Assembly: GCF_001194135.2 (NCBI RefSeq)
Contig: NC_068988.1
Location: 96,720,657-96,754,367 of the forward strand
Reading direction: 5' to 3'
DNA length: 33,711 bases
Origin: Octopus bimaculoides
Lineage: Eukaryota
In this document: in pieces, positions 9,051-32,793 of the stretch
Layout: the number at the start of each line of letters is the position of its first letter
Numbering within the stretch: the stretch's first letter is position 1
The notes under the pieces: generated by a model
Databases searched by the model: none
Told to the model about the DNA's origin: nothing
What the model saw: the letters and a program-made list of their open reading frames with translations, nothing else
Position numbers and translations under genes: made by a program

Positions 9051-9380
9051 GAAATCAGCTGCGCGCGCGCGTGTGCATACATAGTCATATGCATAAAAAG
9101 AATCACATGTATTTTTAAACATGTAAGGAGGTACCCAAAAGAAACCGGAATTTTGCAATATTATTTTATTCCTTTAGTTTTACCTGTTCGCACTTTTATC
9201 GTCTTCAAAGTATTCTCGTTTATATATACGTTTTCTTTAAATTTTGGAATTTATTGCGTTTTTAAATTTTGGAATCTATTTTTTTTCCAGAATTCTATTT
9301 TTGAATCATTTTGGAATCTATCTTGTTTCCTTTATTTTGTTTTTTCCTAGTTAATTTTTGTTTATTTTCAGATCATTAAA

Positions 9381-9600
9381 ATGGAATGTCAAGAAAAACG
9401 AGCATTTTCGACACCCGCTTCTTTTTGCTTTTAATCAAGGTTCTAAGGCCGCAAAAGCTGCTCGCGACATTTGTGCTGTGTATGGATAGGGTGCCATAGC
9501 TGAAAGAACCGCTCGTGATTGGTATGCCAAGTTCAAAAATGGAAATTCTGACCTCAAAGATGCACCTCATTCTGGCCATCCAGTTGAGTTCGATGAAGAG
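9381..9600 (+). mobile_element. Mariner (Tc1/mariner) transposase N-terminal HTH region, pseudogenised; runs into the N gap 9601-10324
   Basis: Manual translation with one early frameshift: MECQ-/KNEHFRHPLLFAFNQGSKAAKAARDICAVYG*GAIAERTARDWYAKFKNGNSDLKDAPHSGHPVEFDEE. This matches the mariner pattern (A..A...I..VYG...I..RT...W...F..G..DL.D.PRSGRP). In-frame TAG at 9487-9489. Confidence 0.92.
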
Positions 9601-10324
9601 NNNNNNNNNNNNNNNNNNNNNNNNNNNNNNNNNNNNNNNNNNNNNNNNNNNNNNNNNNNNNNNNNNNNNNNNNNNNNNNNNNNNNNNNNNNNNNNNNNNN
9701 NNNNNNNNNNNNNNNNNNNNNNNNNNNNNNNNNNNNNNNNNNNNNNNNNNNNNNNNNNNNNNNNNNNNNNNNNNNNNNNNNNNNNNNNNNNNNNNNNNNN
9801 NNNNNNNNNNNNNNNNNNNNNNNNNNNNNNNNNNNNNNNNNNNNNNNNNNNNNNNNNNNNNNNNNNNNNNNNNNNNNNNNNNNNNNNNNNNNNNNNNNNN
9901 NNNNNNNNNNNNNNNNNNNNNNNNNNNNNNNNNNNNNNNNNNNNNNNNNNNNNNNNNNNNNNNNNNNNNNNNNNNNNNNNNNNNNNNNNNNNNNNNNNNN
10001 NNNNNNNNNNNNNNNNNNNNNNNNNNNNNNNNNNNNNNNNNNNNNNNNNNNNNNNNNNNNNNNNNNNNNNNNNNNNNNNNNNNNNNNNNNNNNNNNNNNN
10101 NNNNNNNNNNNNNNNNNNNNNNNNNNNNNNNNNNNNNNNNNNNNNNNNNNNNNNNNNNNNNNNNNNNNNNNNNNNNNNNNNNNNNNNNNNNNNNNNNNNN
10201 NNNNNNNNNNNNNNNNNNNNNNNNNNNNNNNNNNNNNNNNNNNNNNNNNNNNNNNNNNNNNNNNNNNNNNNNNNNNNNNNNNNNNNNNNNNNNNNNNNNN
10301 NNNNNNNNNNNNNNNNNNNNNNNN

Positions 10325-16250: not shown

Positions 16251-16366
16251 TTTAGCGGTTCAGAAACAGAGACCGATAGAATAAGTATTAAACTGGGGTC
16301 GATTTGTTCGAAAAAAAGGCGGTGCTCCAGCATGGCCGCAGTCAAATGACTGGACCAAGTAAAAGA

Positions 16367-16368
<2 letters not shown>
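16251..16368 (+). mobile_element. Family-A SINE tail (orphan)
   Basis: TTAGCGGTTCAG...GAGACCGATAGAATAAGT...CTGGGGTCGATTTGTTCG...AGGCGGTGCTCCAGCATGGCCGCAGTCAAATGACTGG...AAGTAAAAGAAT equals the tail of the 32404 copy. Confidence 0.85.
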
Positions 16369-18726: not shown

Positions 18727-18787
<61 letters not shown>

Positions 18788-18990
18788 GCGGTGAGCTGGC
18801 AGAATTGTTTCTATGCCGGACAAAATGCTGAGCGGCATTTCGCCCGTCTTTACGTTCTAAGTCCAAATTCCACTGAAATCGACTTTGCATTTTATCCTTT
18901 CGGGGTCGATAAAAAAAGTACCAGTTGTGTACTGGGGTCGATGTAATCGACTTACCCCTCCCCCAAAATTGCTAGGTTTTATTAAAATTT
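18788..18990 (+). mobile_element. tRNA-derived SINE (family B)
   Basis: GCGGTGAGCTGGCAGAATTG...TTACGTTCTAAGTCCAAATTCC...CCTTTCGGGGTCGATAAAAAAAGTACCAGTTGTGTACTGGGGTCGATGTAATCGAC aligns along its length with 27923-28134. Confidence 0.88.
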
Positions 18991-21551: not shown

Positions 21552-22093
21552 ATTCCATCTATCAACTAATCATATAAACTGCCAGCTTTATCTTTTTCTG
21601 ATTTCTTCTTAATCTGTTTTCTTATTCCTGAGGTTTTTTTAATTTTTTCAAATATTTTCCCCTCGTTTTAGTGCTTTATTTTTCCCCAGGAAAAAAAAAT
21701 GAGATGTCCACCGAAGCATTAAAATAGATTCCACTCTTCTTCTTTAACTCGGGGCTGAGTAGAGTATTGTATCATTTTAATGGATACAAAATATAGGTTT
21801 TGTATATGTGTGTATGTATATATGTGCGTGCATGTATGTGTGTGCATATTTATGTAGTAGCGAACGGAGGAAAGTATTCATTAAAAATATTTACAGATTG
21901 TTAATTTGATTGCTGAGTCATTAACCATTTAATTATTCAGTGTAAATGAATGGTTAACTAACTAAAAGTAATGTGTAATAATTTCTCAGTTATTAAATTT
22001 ATGTGTGTGTCTGTCGGAACATACATACACTCATATGTATGTATACAAATACATGTACGTATATATATATATAAGTATATTTACATTTATATA

Positions 22094-22622
22094 TGTTCGC
22101 CTTCGCACCTCCGCATTCCACAACCTACCCATCCGTTTCCCACCACTCACAGCCCTCAAACATCTCATCTCAAACGTCTCTGCACCATATAACATTGTAG
22201 GTACAATCACGCTCTCATAAACACCTCCTTTCGCTTTCATACTCAATCTTTTATCTCTCGGGATACCTTTCATAACTCCAAGTCTCTTACTCCACTCTCT
22301 CATCTTATATCCCACCTCGTCAGTCAATCCCCTCATCCACCGTCACATGTAATCTCCGATACTTAAAACCACTCACCTCCTCTAACATCTCACCATTTAT
22401 ACTCACATCCATCCTACTAGCAATTCCATCTCTCGAACATCGCATCACCTTACTCTTAGCTGCATTCACTTTCAGTTTCCTCCCCTCGCACACTCTTCCA
22501 AACTCTACCACCAGTCTCCTCAGTTGCTCTTCCGAATCCGCCACCAGTGCTGAATCATTAGCAAACAACAACTGACTCACCTGCCATTTCTCTCCGTTTT
22601 CTCCCACCATTTCGGCTCCCTT
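22094..22622 (-). mobile_element. RTE-clade non-LTR retrotransposon fragment (C-terminal RT region), inactivated
   Basis: Two overlapping minus-strand frames: GAEMVGENGEKWQVSQLLFANDSALVADSEEQLRRLVVEFGRVCEGRKLKVNAAKSKVM...GEMLEEVSGFKY and ...KRLSMKAKGGVYESVIVPTMLYGAETFEMRCLRAVSG..RMGRLWNAEVRRR. RTE hallmarks: LFADD (here FAND), LKVN..KSKVM, LEEV..FKY, P..LYGAE, EMRCLR, N.EVR.R. Frameshift near 22320-22336. Confidence 0.93.
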
Positions 22623-26855: not shown

Positions 26856-27521
26856 GAGAACATAAGCGAAAATCCGAAACCCAGAACGTCAGCAGTTGAA
26901 AGGTAGCCTGGTGTCAGGTCCGATCTCACGTCTGTCTTCTTCACATATTTATGACTGGTAAGATAAGTGTATTTTATATTCTCCCATAATGTCTTCAGCG
27001 ACATTATATCTGCCATTTTAACAACGACTGCTATTCTGTTCTACCAGTTTCGAATACGACCACCCAATTAGTAAAATAATAAAGATTAGTCTGTGAATAT
27101 GATATCTAGGAATACCAGCATCTGGATTGAGGCGTTTTCATTTTTTAATTTATTGAACTGAAACAGTAATGCGAAATTCAAAGTTACGATTAAAGAACTT
27201 TCAACATCAAATAATGTATTTATACACTCACACACATATAAATGTATATGTATATACATATATATGTACACNNNNNNNNNNNNNNNNNNNNNNNNNNNNN
27301 NNNNNNNNNNNNNNNNNNNNNNNNNNNNNNNNNNNNNNNNNNNNNNNNNNNNNNNNNNNNNNNNNNNNNNNNNNNNNNNNNNNNNNNNNNNNNNNNTATA
27401 TATATATATATATGTATATATAGAGATATACAAATATATACATATGTATATGTGAGAGCACATATATATATATCTTAAGCACTATCGGCCACACATAACG
27501 TACGTGTCCTGCGTATTTACT

Positions 27522-27606
27522 AGTAGGCTGCGACTAGCGCGGTGGAAATGACTCTCTGAAAAAATCAGTAGGCTGCGACTAGCGCGGTGGAAATGACTCT
27601 CTGAAA
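27522..27606. repeat. Perfect 40-bp direct tandem duplication (period 45)
   Basis: AGTAGGCTGCGACTAGCGCGGTGGAAATGACTCTCTGAAA at 27522-27561 and 27567-27606. Confidence 0.95.
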
Positions 27607-27831
27607 GCACCAGGTGTGAAAACAGCTGAGAGTGACGGACAGGCGAGACGTCTCACTCCAGATCTCATTCAGGATTGATAGACATCGACGTTTCACCATT
27701 TTTTGTGGCTTCTCAATATCGATGCCCGTCGATGTCCATCACTCCTGAATGGGATCTGGTGTGAGTTGTCTCTCTTGTCCATGACTTTCCGGTGTTTTAA
27801 CACTGCGCGCTTTGAGGCAGTAACAGCCACC
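27586..27831. repeat. Long imperfect inverted repeat (about 105-bp arms, 36-nt loop)
   Basis: Core arms 27637-27690 and 27727-27780 have 46/54 Watson-Crick pairs ungapped. Outer extension 27601-27636/27781-27816 has 25/36 and 27586-27600/27817-27831 has 9/15, all in the same register. Confidence 0.93.
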
Positions 27832-27890
27832 AAATCCACCTCGGCGGGGATGAACCCAGAACGTTCTAGCGATTCCGCCAGTTCGCCGCC
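27832..27890 (-). mobile_element. Internally deleted family-B SINE head
   Basis: Reverse complement GGCGGCGAACTGGCGGAATCGCTAGAACGTTCTGGGTTCATCCCCGCCGAGGTGGATTT matches the start and B-box region of 27923-28020 with the middle removed. Confidence 0.75.
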
Positions 27891-27922
27891 TTAGACAGCA
27901 ATTTAATATCAACACAAATAAA

Positions 27923-28134
27923 GGCGGTGGGCTGGCAGAAGCGGTAGCACACCGGGCGAAATGTTTAGTGGTATTTCGTCTGCCGTTACGTTCTGAGTTC
28001 AAATTCCGCCGAGGTCGACTTTTCATTTCATCCTTTCAGGGTCGATAAATAAAGTACCAGTTGCGTACTGGGGTCGATCTAATCAACTGGTCCTCCCCTT
28101 CAAAATTTCAGGCCTTGTGCCTAGAGCCGAAAAG
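27923..28134 (+). mobile_element. Full-length tRNA-derived SINE (family B) with target-site duplication
   Basis: GGCGGTGGGCTGGCAGAAGCGGTAGC head, GAGTTCAAATTCC B-box-like motif and CCTTTCAGGGTCGATAAATAAAGTACCAG...CTGGGGTCGAT body. Flanked by AATATCAACACAAATA (27905-27920) and AATATTAACACAAATA (28135-28150). Clear paralog at 18788. Confidence 0.9.
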
Positions 28135-28878
28135 AATATTAACACAAATATAATGGTTTCCTGCCACTGTTTATATAGATGTGAAAAAGAGAACTACTGT
28201 ATTTGTTAGTTTTTATTTAATTATGATAAGAAACAAGAATTTTGTTCTGTTACTATAGAAACAACAATAAATATAGAAGTGCTTTTGTGTGCCAAGGTCA
28301 GTGATGGATTGGATATTTTCGTAGAAATAGACAGACTCACCAAATTGCGTGTTGTTTCCAAACTATCATGAGATATAATTTCTCTAAGCAACTTTAAACT
28401 CTTTGTGTATTGAAAGCATTTGACTGATTAGTTGAGCGTCCAATCTTCAGGATTTGTCTCTTGCTGTTAATAACACAAAACATTTATTGTGATGTGATTA
28501 TTATCGAGATTAACTCTCTGTTGGTTAAAGTTAACTAAGAATTTTATCGGGGTGGTGAGTATTTTAAATTCAATATCAGGCAAGCATATGAAAGAAAAGT
28601 AGCCTGGAAGTAAGGCACCCTGTTTGAATGTAATGTAAGTGCGGAAATTCTAGCTTTAACTGCAACAGCAAGTACTTCCAGACAAGTGGAGCCTGTTCTT
28701 GAACTTGCTCTGCTCCGTCTCATTACGAACGTTTTAGAATAAAAAGTAACTAGCTTCCAACCTCTTCGAATAGAGGAACAACAGTTGATGTTTATTAACC
28801 ACACTGTCATGTCTGAGTCGATGAATTTCTTGATAACTTCTATTACTATAAGCAATAATTGTTCAATCTTCTCTTTGT

Positions 28879-28924: not shown

Positions 28925-29531
28925 TTCGTATTATGATAAACTGATAATAAGTATTATCATTAAAAAAAAAGAAGCAAACTCAAGATATAGGACGAAACGG
29001 TTAAGATTAACTTTGTCGCTCTTTTAGAAGTAAAGTTCAAAGCTGTTGGAGTTTCTTTCTCTCCTCCTGTATGCCTATAGGCTTTCTGCAGCCTAACATG
29101 GGAAACTTACTGACATAAATCTGTAACGTACGATTCCACAATGATTACACCTTATACGATTAATCGTGGAGCCATCTTCAAAATCTTTCAACAAGTTCAC
29201 AAATTAGAAGTTGTTTTTTTGTTTGTTTTTATCATGACTGCCAGTTTGATATTTTTCTTTGTTTGGTGGCATCTTATTAATTTTGTTTTCAGTATCGGGA
29301 AAATGTTTCTCTTTATTGGACGGTGGGCATTTAGCATTGGCAGAATCTAGCGATCTTAAATGAGATCTATCAAGAGTTGCCTATTTACTGGGACTCTATA
29401 CCTTTCAAAGAATCAGCCTCCACAAAACTTTAGTGAGGTTTGCTCCAAAACTGGGAACTATGAAATGCTGAGTTGATTTGAGGTGAAATTCAGTTCAGGT
29501 CAGATTTCTTATATTTGCTACTTTTGTTTAA

Positions 29532-29543
29532 AATAATAATAAC

Positions 29544-29609
<66 letters not shown>
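29532..29609. repeat. (AAT/TAA)n microsatellite, about 26 units, abutting the R4/Dong-like fragment
   Basis: Direct reading. Confidence 0.97.
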
Positions 29610-29610
<1 letters not shown>

Positions 29611-29768
29611 GGAATCCTGGGTATCAGAAAAGGGATTTTCCAGGGTGACAGTCTATTTCCGTTGCTTTTCGTTCTCTGTATGATACCCCTGACCTTGGTA
29701 CTTTGGAAAATGAACCTGGGGTACCAACTAAAGGAATAACCCCAAACACTCAACCACGCCTCTTCATG
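29608..29768 (+). mobile_element. Non-LTR retrotransposon RT fragment, R4/Dong-like
   Basis: Translates GILGIRKGIFQGDSLFPLLFVLCMIPLTLVLWKMNLGYQLKE*..LNH-LFM (1-nt slip), matching the R4/Dong-type motif RRGIFQGDSLSPLLF...GY.L...INHLLFMDD. It stops just before the catalytic DD. Clade assignment is from recalled motifs. Confidence 0.8.
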
Positions 29769-30921: not shown

Positions 30922-31432
30922 GGCACAGGCCTAGCTCAGTGGTTGAGCAGCTCGCTTTGCAACCACGTGGTTTCGGGTTCAGTCCCACCGTGTGGCATTC
31001 TGGGCAAGTACCTTTTTTTTTATAACCTCGGGCGGACTAATGTCTTGTGAGTGAATTTGATAGACGGAAATTATGTGCAAGTCCGTCATATACACACACA
31101 CACTCACACATACTAATACACTTGCTTCTTGTTCCTACACCTATCTTCGTCTTTTTGTTTTTTGTAAATTTGAACTATATATATATATATATTTATTTAT
31201 TTATATATATATATGCACATCCGTACATATATATGTGTCTATGTAGGTACGTGTGCGTATTTTTGAATTTGTTTTTCCACACATACCGCATAGCGTTTTG
31301 GTAAAATAGAAGTGTCACAAAAAGTACCAGAGTTAAAATTAATTACTAAGGTCGATTTGTTTGAATAAAAACCCTTCCAGTCAGTGCTCCCGCATGGCCG
31401 CAGTCCAATGATTGAAACAAATAAAAGAGAAA
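30922..31432 (+). mobile_element. Near full-length tRNA-derived SINE (family A): head, internal microsatellite, tail
   Basis: Head GGCCTAGCTCAGTGGTTGAG...GGTTTCGGGTTCAGTCCCACC...CTGGGCAAGT...GTGAGTGAATTTGATAGACGGAAA. Middle is (CA)n/(TA)n. Tail AAGTACCAG...GGTCGATTTG...GTGCTCCCGCATGGCCGCAGTCCAATGATTGAAACAAATAAAAG. Paralogs at 8918, 13468, 16251, 17687 and 32404. Confidence 0.88.
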
Positions 31433-32403: not shown

Positions 32404-32619
32404 ATTCTTTTACTTGTTTCAGTCATTTGACAGCGGCCATGCTGGAGTACCACCTTTAGTCGAACAAATCGACCACAGAACTTATTCCTTGTAAGCCAAG
32501 TACTTATTCTATCGTTTTCTTGTTACCGAACCGCTAGGTGACGGGGACGTATACACACTGACATCGGTTGTCAAGCGATTTTGTGGGGAGAAACACAGGC
32601 ACAGCATACATACATACAT

Positions 32620-32674
<55 letters not shown>

Positions 32675-32793
32675 ACGGGCTTCTTTCAGTTTCCGTCTAC
32701 CAAATCCATTCACAACGCTATAGTAAAAGATACTTGGCCAAGGTACCACGCAGTGGGACTGAACCTGGAACCATGTGGTTGGGAAGCAAGCTT
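32404..32793 (-). mobile_element. Family-A SINE, 5'-clipped, with internal microsatellite
   Basis: Reverse complement reads AAGCTTGCTTCCCAACCACATGGTTCCAGGTTCAGTCCCACTGCGTGGTACCTTGGCCAAGT...TTGGTAGACGGAAACTGAAAGAAGCCCGTTG-(TA)n-...CGCTTGACAACCGATG...GGTCGATTTGTTCGACTAAAGGTGGTACTCCAGCATGGCCGC...AAACAAGTAAAAGAAT. Confidence 0.9.

What the first reader, a model, noticed from the sequence alone, without database searches (positions are those of the whole stretch)
27586..27831. Large RNA fold-back with an ideal ADAR-type site; candidate editing element, novel miRNA hairpin or MITE
Seen: ungapped inverted repeat with 80/105 Watson-Crick pairs and a 36-nt loop. The 54-bp core GGACAGGCGAGACGTCTCACTCCAGATCTCATTCAGGATTGATAGACATCGACG pairs with CGTCGATGTCCATCACTCCTGAATGGGATCTGGTGTGAGTTGTCTCTCTTGTCC. 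Of its 8 non-WC positions, 3 are G.U wobbles on the plus strand but only 1 on the minus strand, favouring a plus-strand RNA (the same strand as the candidate exons). One mismatch is A27680 opposite C27737 in a U-A-G context. Established: UAG with an opposing C is the preferred ADAR target; coleoid cephalopods have exceptionally extensive A-to-I editing and many lineage-specific miRNAs. The arms are not part of any SINE seen in this window. Inference: a structured RNA element, or an old MITE that now supplies dsRNA.
Basis: partly seen in the sequence, partly recalled or inferred. Interest (0 to 1): 0.72.

Follow-up and report, generated by a model that had tools for sequence, protein, structure and literature searches.

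The report
Old repeat-derived DNA palindrome (fold-back)
The 246-base fold-back is real, but it looks like an old, decaying inverted duplication of repeat-like DNA in transposon-rich non-coding sequence, a common kind of hairpin in octopus-type genomes, and nothing shows it is a microRNA gene or a dedicated RNA-editing element.

Summary
Arms 27586-27690 and 27727-27831 pair at 80 of 105 positions around a 36-nt loop. RNA folding gives -129.8 kcal/mol on the + strand and -120.1 on the - strand, far beyond shuffled controls.

The arguments for a dedicated function do not hold.
- Strand preference: 6 versus 4 G·U pairs (p=0.75), or 3 versus 1 in the core (p=0.63).
- The A:C mismatch in a UAG context arises by chance in about 20-23% of simulated decayed palindromes.
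- The arms differ by 10 transitions and 15 transversions, about as diverged (76%) as two SINE copies in the window (80%).
- A 105-bp stem is not animal pre-miRNA geometry, and no Rfam family reaches threshold.

The MITE reading could not be settled.
- No target-site duplication flanks the symmetric ends, and the window holds no second copy.
- None of the searchable public collections returned even the abundant SINE, so genomic copy number is untestable here.

The element is GC-rich (49%, top 1% of the window). It abuts a 3'-truncated tRNA-like SINE head on the minus strand.

Verdict: a neutral, repeat-derived palindrome that would be a passive ADAR substrate if transcribed. Interest is low.

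The parts
27586..27690 (.). Left arm of the palindrome (105 nt, GC 50.5%)
   Evidence: A gapped local alignment does not extend the homology beyond GGTGG.
27691..27726 (.). 36-nt spacer/loop. It holds a T6 run (27699-27704) on + and a partial direct copy (ATCGATGCC) of the inner end of the right arm.
27727..27831 (.). Right arm of the palindrome (105 nt, GC 51.4%)
27637..27780 (.). Better-preserved inner hairpin: the 54-bp core stems (46/54 WC) plus the loop. The outer 51 positions have 17 mismatches against 8 in the core.
   Evidence: Fisher p=0.038
27680..27680 (+). A opposite C27737 in a U-A-G context. It is one of four A:C mismatches on the + strand RNA; six exist on the - strand RNA.
   Evidence: chance expectation
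27522..27611 (.). Recent 45-nt tandem duplication (27522-27566 and 27567-27611) spanning the left flank/arm boundary. The first 40 nt are identical and the last 5 differ (AAATC vs GCACC).
   Evidence: D2
27832..27890 (-). Fragment of a tRNA-like SINE head on the minus strand. It has a ~39-nt internal deletion relative to the full copies and is 3'-truncated exactly at the end of the palindrome.
   Evidence: alignment; (score 20 vs 10.0 +/- 1.8, 0/1000 shuffles)
27921..28134 (+). Full tRNA-like, CORE-like SINE copy flanked by a 16-bp target-site duplication (27905-27920 / 28135-28150). It is a neighbour, not part of the hairpin.
   Evidence: (D3)
27559..27564 (-). T6 run on the minus strand, 21 nt downstream of the minus-strand hairpin. 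It is relevant only to the speculative Pol III reading.
   Evidence: read directly from the sequence

Best explanation
The feature is an old DNA palindrome. One inverted-duplication event made two 105-nt copies of GC-rich, repeat-like sequence around a 36-nt spacer. The copies have since decayed roughly neutrally to 76% arm identity.

It sits in transposon-rich, microsatellite-rich non-coding DNA, inside a ~660-bp GC-rich block of interspersed-repeat material.

It has no dedicated function. If the locus lies within a Pol II transcript (intron, UTR or lncRNA) on either strand, the RNA folds back on itself. It then becomes an ordinary promiscuous substrate for ADAR hyper-editing, like the very many such hairpins described in octopus non-coding RNA.

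Shown: the structure, its significance, the lack of strand bias, the lack of wobble-preserving substitutions, and the composition and neighbours.

Inferred: neutrality, repeat origin and the ADAR fate.

The origin is not resolved. I lean slightly towards a decayed copy of a palindromic (MITE-like or fold-back) interspersed repeat over a one-off local fold-back duplication.
For: - Structure and significance.
- Arm differences are 10 transitions and 15 transversions. G·U-compatible changes are 6 on + and 4 on -, so there is no enrichment of pair-preserving changes and no strand preference.
- Arm identity of 76% (JC distance 0.29) is similar to the 79.6% identity of the two SINE copies in the window, as expected for neutral decay.
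- The longest perfect helix is only 10 bp.
- GC is 49% against a window mean of 36.5%, the top 1% of 246-nt windows. The left flank (50%) and neighbouring SINEs (46-58%) are equally GC-rich. This points to repeat-derived sequence.
- The window is full of TE debris: a mariner HTH_48 fragment, an RT fragment, several SINE families.
- No Rfam family reaches its gathering score, and ARAGORN finds no tRNA.
- Literature:
  - Octopus and frog have the exceptionally high fractions of loci able to form long dsRNA among 19 species, and octopus has over 1 million hyper-edited sites. [quoted passage not shown]
  - Most octopus editing is in introns and 3'UTRs, which are rich in hairpins (PMC9699675).
Against: - Neutrality is inferred from a single locus, with no orthologue or paralogue to compare.
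- The inner 54 bp are better preserved than the outer 51 (8 vs 17 mismatches, p=0.038). This could reflect weak constraint on the inner hairpin, although arm-to-arm gene conversion or a mis-registered outer alignment would also explain it.
- Transcription, editing and copy number could not be examined at all. The protein and DNA collections available returned nothing even for the abundant SINE used as a control.
- No TSD supports a transposon origin.
Confidence: 0.75

Rival explanations
1. It is a bona fide MITE: a copy of a multi-copy, palindromic, non-autonomous DNA transposon mobilised by a transposase that recognises its ends. This is a sub-case of the best explanation as to function, and differs only in origin.
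For: - Size (246 bp), near-complete palindromic architecture with a short loop, and no coding capacity.
- GC-rich, repeat-like composition.
- Sharp ends of the inverted repeat.
- Class II transposase debris in the same window (mariner HTH_48, E 3e-8).
- Precedent: the palindromic Harbinger repeat of Xenopus (PMC5625713).
Against: - No 2-9-bp direct repeat flanks the symmetric ends. There is no TA, TTAA or TWA at the boundaries.
- No second full or half copy in 33.7 kb by blastn, nhmmer or gapped alignment.
- The SINE that is interrupted on the right does not resume on the left, so a simple insertion into that SINE is not supported.
- Termini of the form GGTGG...CCACC match no TIR superfamily signature that I know of (own knowledge).
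Confidence: 0.35
2. It is a one-off local inverted duplication, made by fold-back or template-switch repair of a break. The left arm is the original sequence and the right arm is the inverted copy, joined to a broken SINE.
For: - No TSD.
- The outer end of the right arm coincides with a rearrangement breakpoint. The adjoining minus-strand SINE head is 3'-truncated there. Retroposition does not produce that: target-primed reverse transcription truncates 5' ends (established knowledge).
- The left arm is contiguous with its flank.
- The short 36-nt spacer is typical of fold-back events (own knowledge).
Against: - Such events are, to my knowledge, rarer than TE-derived hairpins.
- The GC-rich composition suggests the duplicated DNA was itself a repeat.
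- No microhomology signature can be assigned confidently at the junction.
Confidence: 0.3
3. The hairpin is the body of a minus-strand tRNA-derived SINE-like retroposon. The layout would be head 27890->27832, palindromic body 27831->27586, a 3' region, then a (TA)n-type tail at 27473->27397.
For: - The SINE-head homology abuts the palindrome with no gap.
- A GC-rich 112-nt segment and then a microsatellite follow on the 3' side.
- Families with related heads and different bodies are common among SINEs (PMC4758252, PMC4824008).
Against: - No second copy of head plus hairpin in the window.
- I know of no SINE with a long palindromic body.
- The head carries a ~39-nt internal deletion that puts the box A-like and box B-like motifs only ~12 nt apart.
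- The upstream TSD cannot be checked, because the far side runs into the N gap at 27272-27396.
Confidence: 0.12
4. It is a functional small-RNA precursor: a novel lineage-specific miRNA hairpin, or a long hairpin RNA (hpRNA) processed by Dicer.
For: - A very stable hairpin.
- The inner 54-bp core is better preserved than the outer stem.
- Octopus has 90 novel miRNA families (PMC9699675).
- Weak covariance-model matches to miRNA models, best MIR2118 at E 0.0013.
Against: - A 105-bp stem with a 36-nt loop lacks the ~33-35-bp stem and basal junction of animal pri-miRNAs (established knowledge).
- All Rfam matches are far below gathering (29.7 vs 85 bits) and go to an unrelated plant family, which reflects generic hairpin shape.
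- No excess of pair-preserving substitutions.
- A survey of 32 molluscs found no evidence of an endogenous siRNA pathway; O. bimaculoides was among the species it compared for Dicer-like read pairs (PMC12479628).
- The sequence is absent from the held supplements of PMC9699675, but those hold no precursor sequences, so this is uninformative.
Confidence: 0.03
5. It is a dedicated site-selective editing element, built so that A27680 (UAG opposite C) is edited for a regulatory purpose.
For: The context matches the mammalian ADAR preference: 5'U, 3'G, A:C mismatch (PMC12940819).
Against: - At least one such site arises by chance in 20-23% of simulated decayed palindromes.
- It is one of four A:C mismatches on +, and six exist on -.
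- Octopus is among the species with the most reduced 3'-G preference (PMC5625713).
- No exon or ORF of recognisable function contains the site.
Confidence: 0.02

Closest known systems
Palindromic Harbinger-derived repeats of Xenopus tropicalis (~200-221 bp), the most hyper-edited repeat family in frog (PMC5625713)
   Same: A ~200-250-bp element whose two halves are reverse complements. It folds on itself with a short loop and needs no neighbouring inverted partner to make a long dsRNA that ADAR can edit.
   Different: The frog element is a defined multi-copy family with a palindromic consensus. Here copy number, consensus, TIR type and TSD are unknown or absent. Pairing is looser (76% WC), and editing has not been observed.
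Inverted pairs of SINEs (for example inverted Alu pairs) in introns and 3'UTRs as ADAR substrates (PMC5625713)
   Same: Imperfect duplexes of 100 bp or more, ~75-85% paired, formed by decayed repeat copies in non-coding transcript regions, with promiscuous clustered editing.
   Different: Those are two independent insertions, usually hundreds of bases apart. Here the two arms end at the same internal point around a 36-nt spacer, which indicates a single event. The arms are also not related to the SINEs in the window.
MITEs (Stowaway/Tourist-type and other palindromic non-autonomous DNA transposons)
   Same: Small, non-coding, terminal inverted repeats, hairpin-forming.
   Different: No target-site duplication and no recognisable superfamily terminus. 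Multi-copy status was not demonstrated.
Drosophila hpRNA loci (long inverted repeats giving endo-siRNAs; own knowledge)
   Same: A long intramolecular RNA hairpin from a genomic inverted repeat.
   Different: hpRNAs need a dedicated siRNA Dicer and Argonaute. These and their products were not found in molluscs (PMC12479628).
Animal pre-miRNA hairpins (MirGeneDB-type criteria; octopus novel families in PMC9699675)
   Same: An RNA hairpin with a few mismatches and G·U pairs.
   Different: The stem is about three times too long, there is no defined basal junction, no family match, and no evidence of conservation.

Membership tests
Animal microRNA precursor | Hairpin with a ~33-35-bp stem (pre-miRNA ~55-70 nt) flanked by single-stranded basal segments | tested here: not met
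   The stem is 105 bp (the core alone is 54 bp), the loop is 36 nt and the total is 246 nt. The helix continues without a clear basal junction.
Animal microRNA precursor | Match to a described miRNA family | tested here: not met
   No Rfam family reaches its gathering score. The best sub-threshold hit is plant MIR2118, 29.7 bits vs 85.
Animal microRNA precursor | Reads of ~22 nt from both arms with 2-nt 3' overhangs and homogeneous 5' ends | not testable with these tools
   No small-RNA data are accessible. The supplements of PMC9699675 hold no precursor sequences.
Animal microRNA precursor | Presence of the hairpin in a second species (criterion used for octopus novel miRNAs, PMC9699675) | not testable with these tools
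   The searchable collections returned nothing for either the hairpin pattern or the SINE control.
MITE | Terminal inverted repeats, small size, no coding capacity | tested here: met
   The arms are 105 nt at 76% identity and the element is 246 bp. Only short ORFs of 63 aa or less lie within the element; one 95-aa ORF merely overlaps the right arm. The two ORFs searched have no homologue.
MITE | Target-site duplication flanking the termini | tested here: not met
   There is no direct repeat of 4 bp or more at the ends of the inverted repeat or outside them. Symmetric boundaries (+/-3 nt) give at most 3-4-bp matches, the only 4-mer lying ~50 nt inside the arms. No TA, TTAA or TWA is present. 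AAATC (27562-66 / 27832-36) fits only asymmetric ends.
MITE | Many dispersed copies with consistent ends | tested here: inconclusive
   There is no other copy in the 33.7-kb window. A collinear weak match at 29346-29424(-) is not significant window-wide, since 38/60 shuffles score as high. Genome-wide copy number is not testable.
ADAR hyper-editing substrate (long intramolecular dsRNA) | Stable intramolecular duplex of many tens of bp in the RNA | tested here: met
   In silico only. MFE is -129.8 on + and -120.1 on - with z below -10, and 86/105 (+) or 84/105 (-) positions pair including G·U. However, the longest perfect run is 10 bp.
ADAR hyper-editing substrate (long intramolecular dsRNA) | The locus is transcribed and shows clustered A-to-G RNA/DNA differences | not testable with these tools
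   No RNA-seq access. No host gene was identified.
tRNA-derived (CORE-like) SINE present in the window | Sequence homology of the arms to the SINE | tested here: not met
   Arm versus SINE alignments are not significant: 23-277 of 300 shuffles score at least as high. Only the right flank 27832-27890(-) is SINE-head-like.
hpRNA / endo-siRNA locus | Host has a dedicated siRNA Dicer/Argonaute pathway | not tested
   Literature only. A survey of 32 molluscs found no such pathway; O. bimaculoides was among the species compared for Dicer-like read pairs (PMC12479628).

The most novel reading that the evidence does not exclude
On the minus strand the layout is a tRNA-like SINE head with box A-like and box B-like motifs (27890->27832), then immediately the 246-nt hairpin (27831->27586), then 21 nt and a T6 run (27564->27559). 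This could be a Pol III-transcribed hairpin-RNA unit whose stem is processed into small RNAs or serves as a regulated dsRNA. It would resemble the tRNA-pre-miRNA units of murine gammaherpesvirus 68 (own knowledge), in a phylum reported to lack endogenous siRNAs. My evidence does not exclude this, but nothing positively supports it. The head has a ~39-nt deletion that leaves the two boxes only ~12 nt apart. The T6 arises at the junction of a recent tandem duplication. The arms show no pair-preserving evolution.
Probability: 0.02. Interest if true: 0.6.

Novelty: new member of a known kind. Interest (0 to 1): 0.12.

Why it matters
As it stands it matters little. It is one more example of the inverted-repeat hairpins that make cephalopod non-coding transcripts rich in dsRNA and so in promiscuous A-to-I editing.

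Its practical value is cautionary. Long hairpins of this kind give sub-threshold covariance-model hits to miRNA families, and by chance they carry 'ideal' ADAR contexts. Neither should be read as evidence of a gene.

It would become interesting only if orthologues showed compensatory conservation, or if discrete small RNAs came from it.

Tried and rejected
1. Other copies through proteins.
- ORFs across the hairpin (63 aa) and across hairpin plus SINE (95 aa) found no homologues.
- Five window ORFs are not on record as exact products.
- The SINE-containing ORF also found nothing, so the protein collection does not sample this genome's non-coding DNA and the negatives carry no weight on copy number.

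2. Other copies through DNA.
- A two-arm consensus pattern gave zero hits in the metagenome, GTDB genome and viral collections.
- A control pattern from the abundant SINE also gave zero, so these scans are equally uninformative.

3. A third copy in the window.
- blastn at word size 7, an nhmmer profile of both arms, and gapped alignment were all tried.
- A collinear match at 29346-29424(-) looked suggestive locally (1/500 shuffles).
- It is not significant against the whole window (38/60 shuffles), so I rejected it.

4. Extending the palindrome into the flanks, or relating the left flank to a SINE head. Neither is significant.

5. The interrupted SINE resuming left of the hairpin, which would show an insertion. 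Not found.

6. TIRs of the mariner fragment at ~9.4 kb as a possible source of the hairpin ends. No TIR was found; only simple-repeat matches appeared, and a 724-nt N gap (9601-10324) interrupts the element.

7. A host gene. Pfam on concatenated + strand ORFs and on selected - strand ORFs found only transposon remnants. The full - strand set was not scanned.

8. Octopus miRNA supplements. They hold no precursor sequences.

9. Assembly artefact. Rejected because the arms are 24% diverged.

Full report
**Observation.** The region was read directly. An ungapped inverted repeat was recovered independently: arms 27586-27690 and 27727-27831, 105 nt, 76% complementary, 36 nt apart.
- A position-by-position count gives 80/105 Watson-Crick pairs.
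There are eight non-WC positions: three G·U on the plus strand, one A·C (A27680:C27737, in a T-A-G context) and four true mismatches.
- As RNA the 246 nt fold to -129.8 kcal/mol on the plus strand (shuffles -71.4 +/- 4.7, z -12.4) and -120.1 on the minus strand (z -10.8).
- The same hairpin dominates folds of 447-nt and 346-nt contexts.
I would expect an assembly or chimeric-read palindrome to be near-perfect, so the 24% arm divergence argues that this is real, old sequence.

**Anatomy and surroundings.**
- A gapped local alignment of the extended flanks stops exactly at GGTGG...CCACC, so the palindrome is 246 bp.
- The left boundary is overlapped by a recent 45-nt tandem duplication, 27522-27566 and 27567-27611. 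Forty nucleotides are identical and the last five differ.
- Further left lie a TA-rich microsatellite and an N gap at 27272-27396.
- The right flank, read on the minus strand (27890->27832), is homologous to the tRNA-like head of a SINE.
  - Full copies of that SINE lie at 27921-28134(+) and 18783-18963(+).
  - Alignment is; the score is 20 against 10.0 +/- 1.8, with 0/1000 shuffles as high.
  - The fragment has a ~39-nt internal deletion and is 3'-truncated exactly where the palindrome begins.
  - The rest of that SINE does not reappear on the other side of the palindrome.
- The arms are not related to the SINE, and the left flank is not related to the right flank.
- The hairpin has 49% G+C against a window mean of 36.5%, the top 1% of 246-nt windows. 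It forms part of a ~660-bp GC-rich block (27474-28134) made largely of repeat material.
- The window as a whole is a gapped draft scaffold with seven N runs. It is full of microsatellites and transposon debris:
  - a mariner/Mos1-type transposase N-terminus at ~9355-9600 (Pfam HTH_48, E 3e-8);
  - a weak reverse-transcriptase fragment at 22323-22622(-);
  - at least two further dispersed repeat pairs.
- No coding exon of a host gene was recognised.

**Is there evidence of function?** Four arguments were tested.

1. Strand.
- G·U-compatible differences number 6 on the plus strand and 4 on the minus (binomial p=0.75). In the core the counts are 3 and 1 (p=0.63).
- The number of paired positions is 86 versus 84 of 105.
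- There is no strand preference.

2. Substitution pattern.
- The 25 arm differences are 10 transitions and 15 transversions. Most changes destroy pairing rather than convert it to wobble.
- The longest perfect helix is 10 bp.
- Arm identity (76%, Jukes-Cantor distance 0.29) is comparable to that between the two SINE copies in the window (79.6%).
- This is what neutral decay looks like.
- The one irregularity is that the inner 54 bp have 8 differences and the outer 51 have 17 (Fisher p=0.038). It is borderline and could come from arm-to-arm gene conversion, weak constraint, or alignment register.

3. The 'ideal ADAR site'.
- The rule itself is correct for mammalian ADARs: 5' U>A>C>G, 3' G>C~A>U, A:C favoured (PMC12940819).
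- In simulations of a perfect palindrome given 25 random differences, 20-23% carry at least one UAG/A:C site on the plus strand.
- This site is one of four A:C mismatches on plus and six on minus.
- Octopus is among the species with the most reduced 3'-G preference (PMC5625713).

4. Known RNA families.
- Nothing reaches an Rfam gathering score, and ARAGORN finds no tRNA.
- At permissive thresholds the hairpin hits the plant MIR2118 model at 29.7 bits (gathering 85). Neighbouring microsatellite hairpins hit mir-297, mir-1277 and mir-3149 at similar scores. These are generic hairpin-shape matches.

**What it most likely is.** It is a repeat-derived DNA palindrome created by a single inverted-duplication event, since both arms end at the same internal point. 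It is now decaying without constraint.
- If it lies in a Pol II transcript, it would fold into a ~105-bp imperfect duplex and be promiscuously edited. This is the well-described fate of such structures.
  - Octopus and frog have the exceptionally high fractions of loci able to form long dsRNA among 19 species, and octopus has more than a million hyper-edited sites (PMC5625713).
  - Most octopus editing lies in introns and 3'UTRs, which are rich in hairpins (PMC9699675).
- The nearest described analogue is the palindromic ~200-bp Harbinger repeat of Xenopus (PMC5625713).

The origin is unresolved between three options.
- A decayed copy of a palindromic MITE-like family.
  - For: architecture, composition and the presence of class II elements.
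  - Against: no TSD and no second copy in the window.
- A one-off fold-back duplication.
  - For: the breakpoint in the SINE at the right end, and no TSD.
- The body of a minus-strand SINE-like retroposon.
  - For: the head abuts the hairpin.
  - Against: no precedent that I know of, and a damaged head.

**Rejected or disfavoured readings.**
- A canonical miRNA is disfavoured by geometry and by the lack of any family match.
- A Dicer-processed long hairpin is disfavoured because a survey of 32 molluscs found no endogenous siRNA pathway; O. bimaculoides was among the species it compared for Dicer-like read pairs (PMC12479628).
- A dedicated site-selective editing element has no support beyond a context that chance supplies one time in five.

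**Limits.** None of the public collections reachable here samples this genome's non-coding DNA.
- A hairpin ORF and a SINE-containing control ORF that also spans the right arm both found nothing in the protein collection.
- DNA scans for the hairpin and for the abundant SINE found nothing.
- Five window ORFs are not on record as exact products.
- Copy number, orthology, transcription, editing and small RNAs therefore remain untested. The decisive experiments are listed separately.

**Verdict.** The feature is real and the explanation is ordinary. It is a new instance of a known kind of element, and interest is low.

Noticed in passing
27905-28150: The plus-strand tRNA-like, CORE-like SINE (27921-28134, 214 bp) is flanked by a 16-bp target-site duplication, AATATCAACACAAATA / AATATTAACACAAATA. 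A second copy at 18783-18963 is ~80% identical.
   Followed up: partly
27832-27890 (-): A SINE-head fragment with a ~39-nt internal deletion, 3'-truncated exactly at the palindrome boundary. Its box B-like motif (GGTTCATCCCC) is closer to the tRNA consensus than that of the full copies. With the plus-strand SINE it forms a head-to-head pair (I12).
   Followed up: partly
27522-27611; 27562-27566 and 27832-27836: A 45-nt tandem duplication in which 40 nt are identical and all three differences cluster in the last 5 nt (AAATC vs GCACC). The pentamer AAATC also directly follows the right end of the palindrome. The mechanism is unexplained: possibly a deleted tandem dimer, ectopic repair, or coincidence.
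   Followed up: partly
27586-27636 vs 27637-27690: Arm divergence is uneven: 17/51 mismatches in the outer part against 8/54 in the inner core (Fisher p=0.038).
   Followed up: partly
9355-9600 (+): An N-terminal fragment of a mariner/Mos1-type transposase (Pfam HTH_48, E 3e-8; the ...ARDWYAKFKNGNSDLKDAPHSGHPVEFDEE motif is in another frame). It has frame breaks and runs into the N gap at 9601-10324. No TIR was found.
   Followed up: partly
22034-22622 (-); 29515-29739 (+): Reverse-transcriptase-like fragments of non-LTR retrotransposons. RVT_1 scores E 2.8e-4, below the Pfam cut-off, at 22323-22622. An FQGDSL-type motif at 29515-29739 has no Pfam hit.
   Followed up: partly
16293-16368 / 32404-32478; 30949-31016 / 32725-32792: Two further pairs of dispersed repeats in inverted orientation (88% and 79% identity), probably other SINE families.
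   Followed up: no
27400-27475: TA/TATG microsatellite hairpins give sub-threshold Rfam hits to mir-297, mir-1277 and mir-3149 at E ~0.003. This shows how low-complexity hairpins mimic miRNA models.
   Followed up: yes
29346-29424 (-): A collinear weak similarity to the left arm (GTGGAGGCTGATTCTTTGAAAG ... AGATCTCATTTAAGATCGCTAGA). It is locally suggestive (1/500 shuffles) but not significant against the whole window (38/60 shuffles).
   Followed up: yes
whole window: Seven N runs (10-925 nt), G+C of 36%, and very dense (TA)n, (CA)n, (GA)n and (TATG)n microsatellites. This is a gapped draft scaffold, consistent with a cephalopod genome, though the organism was not verified.
   Followed up: no
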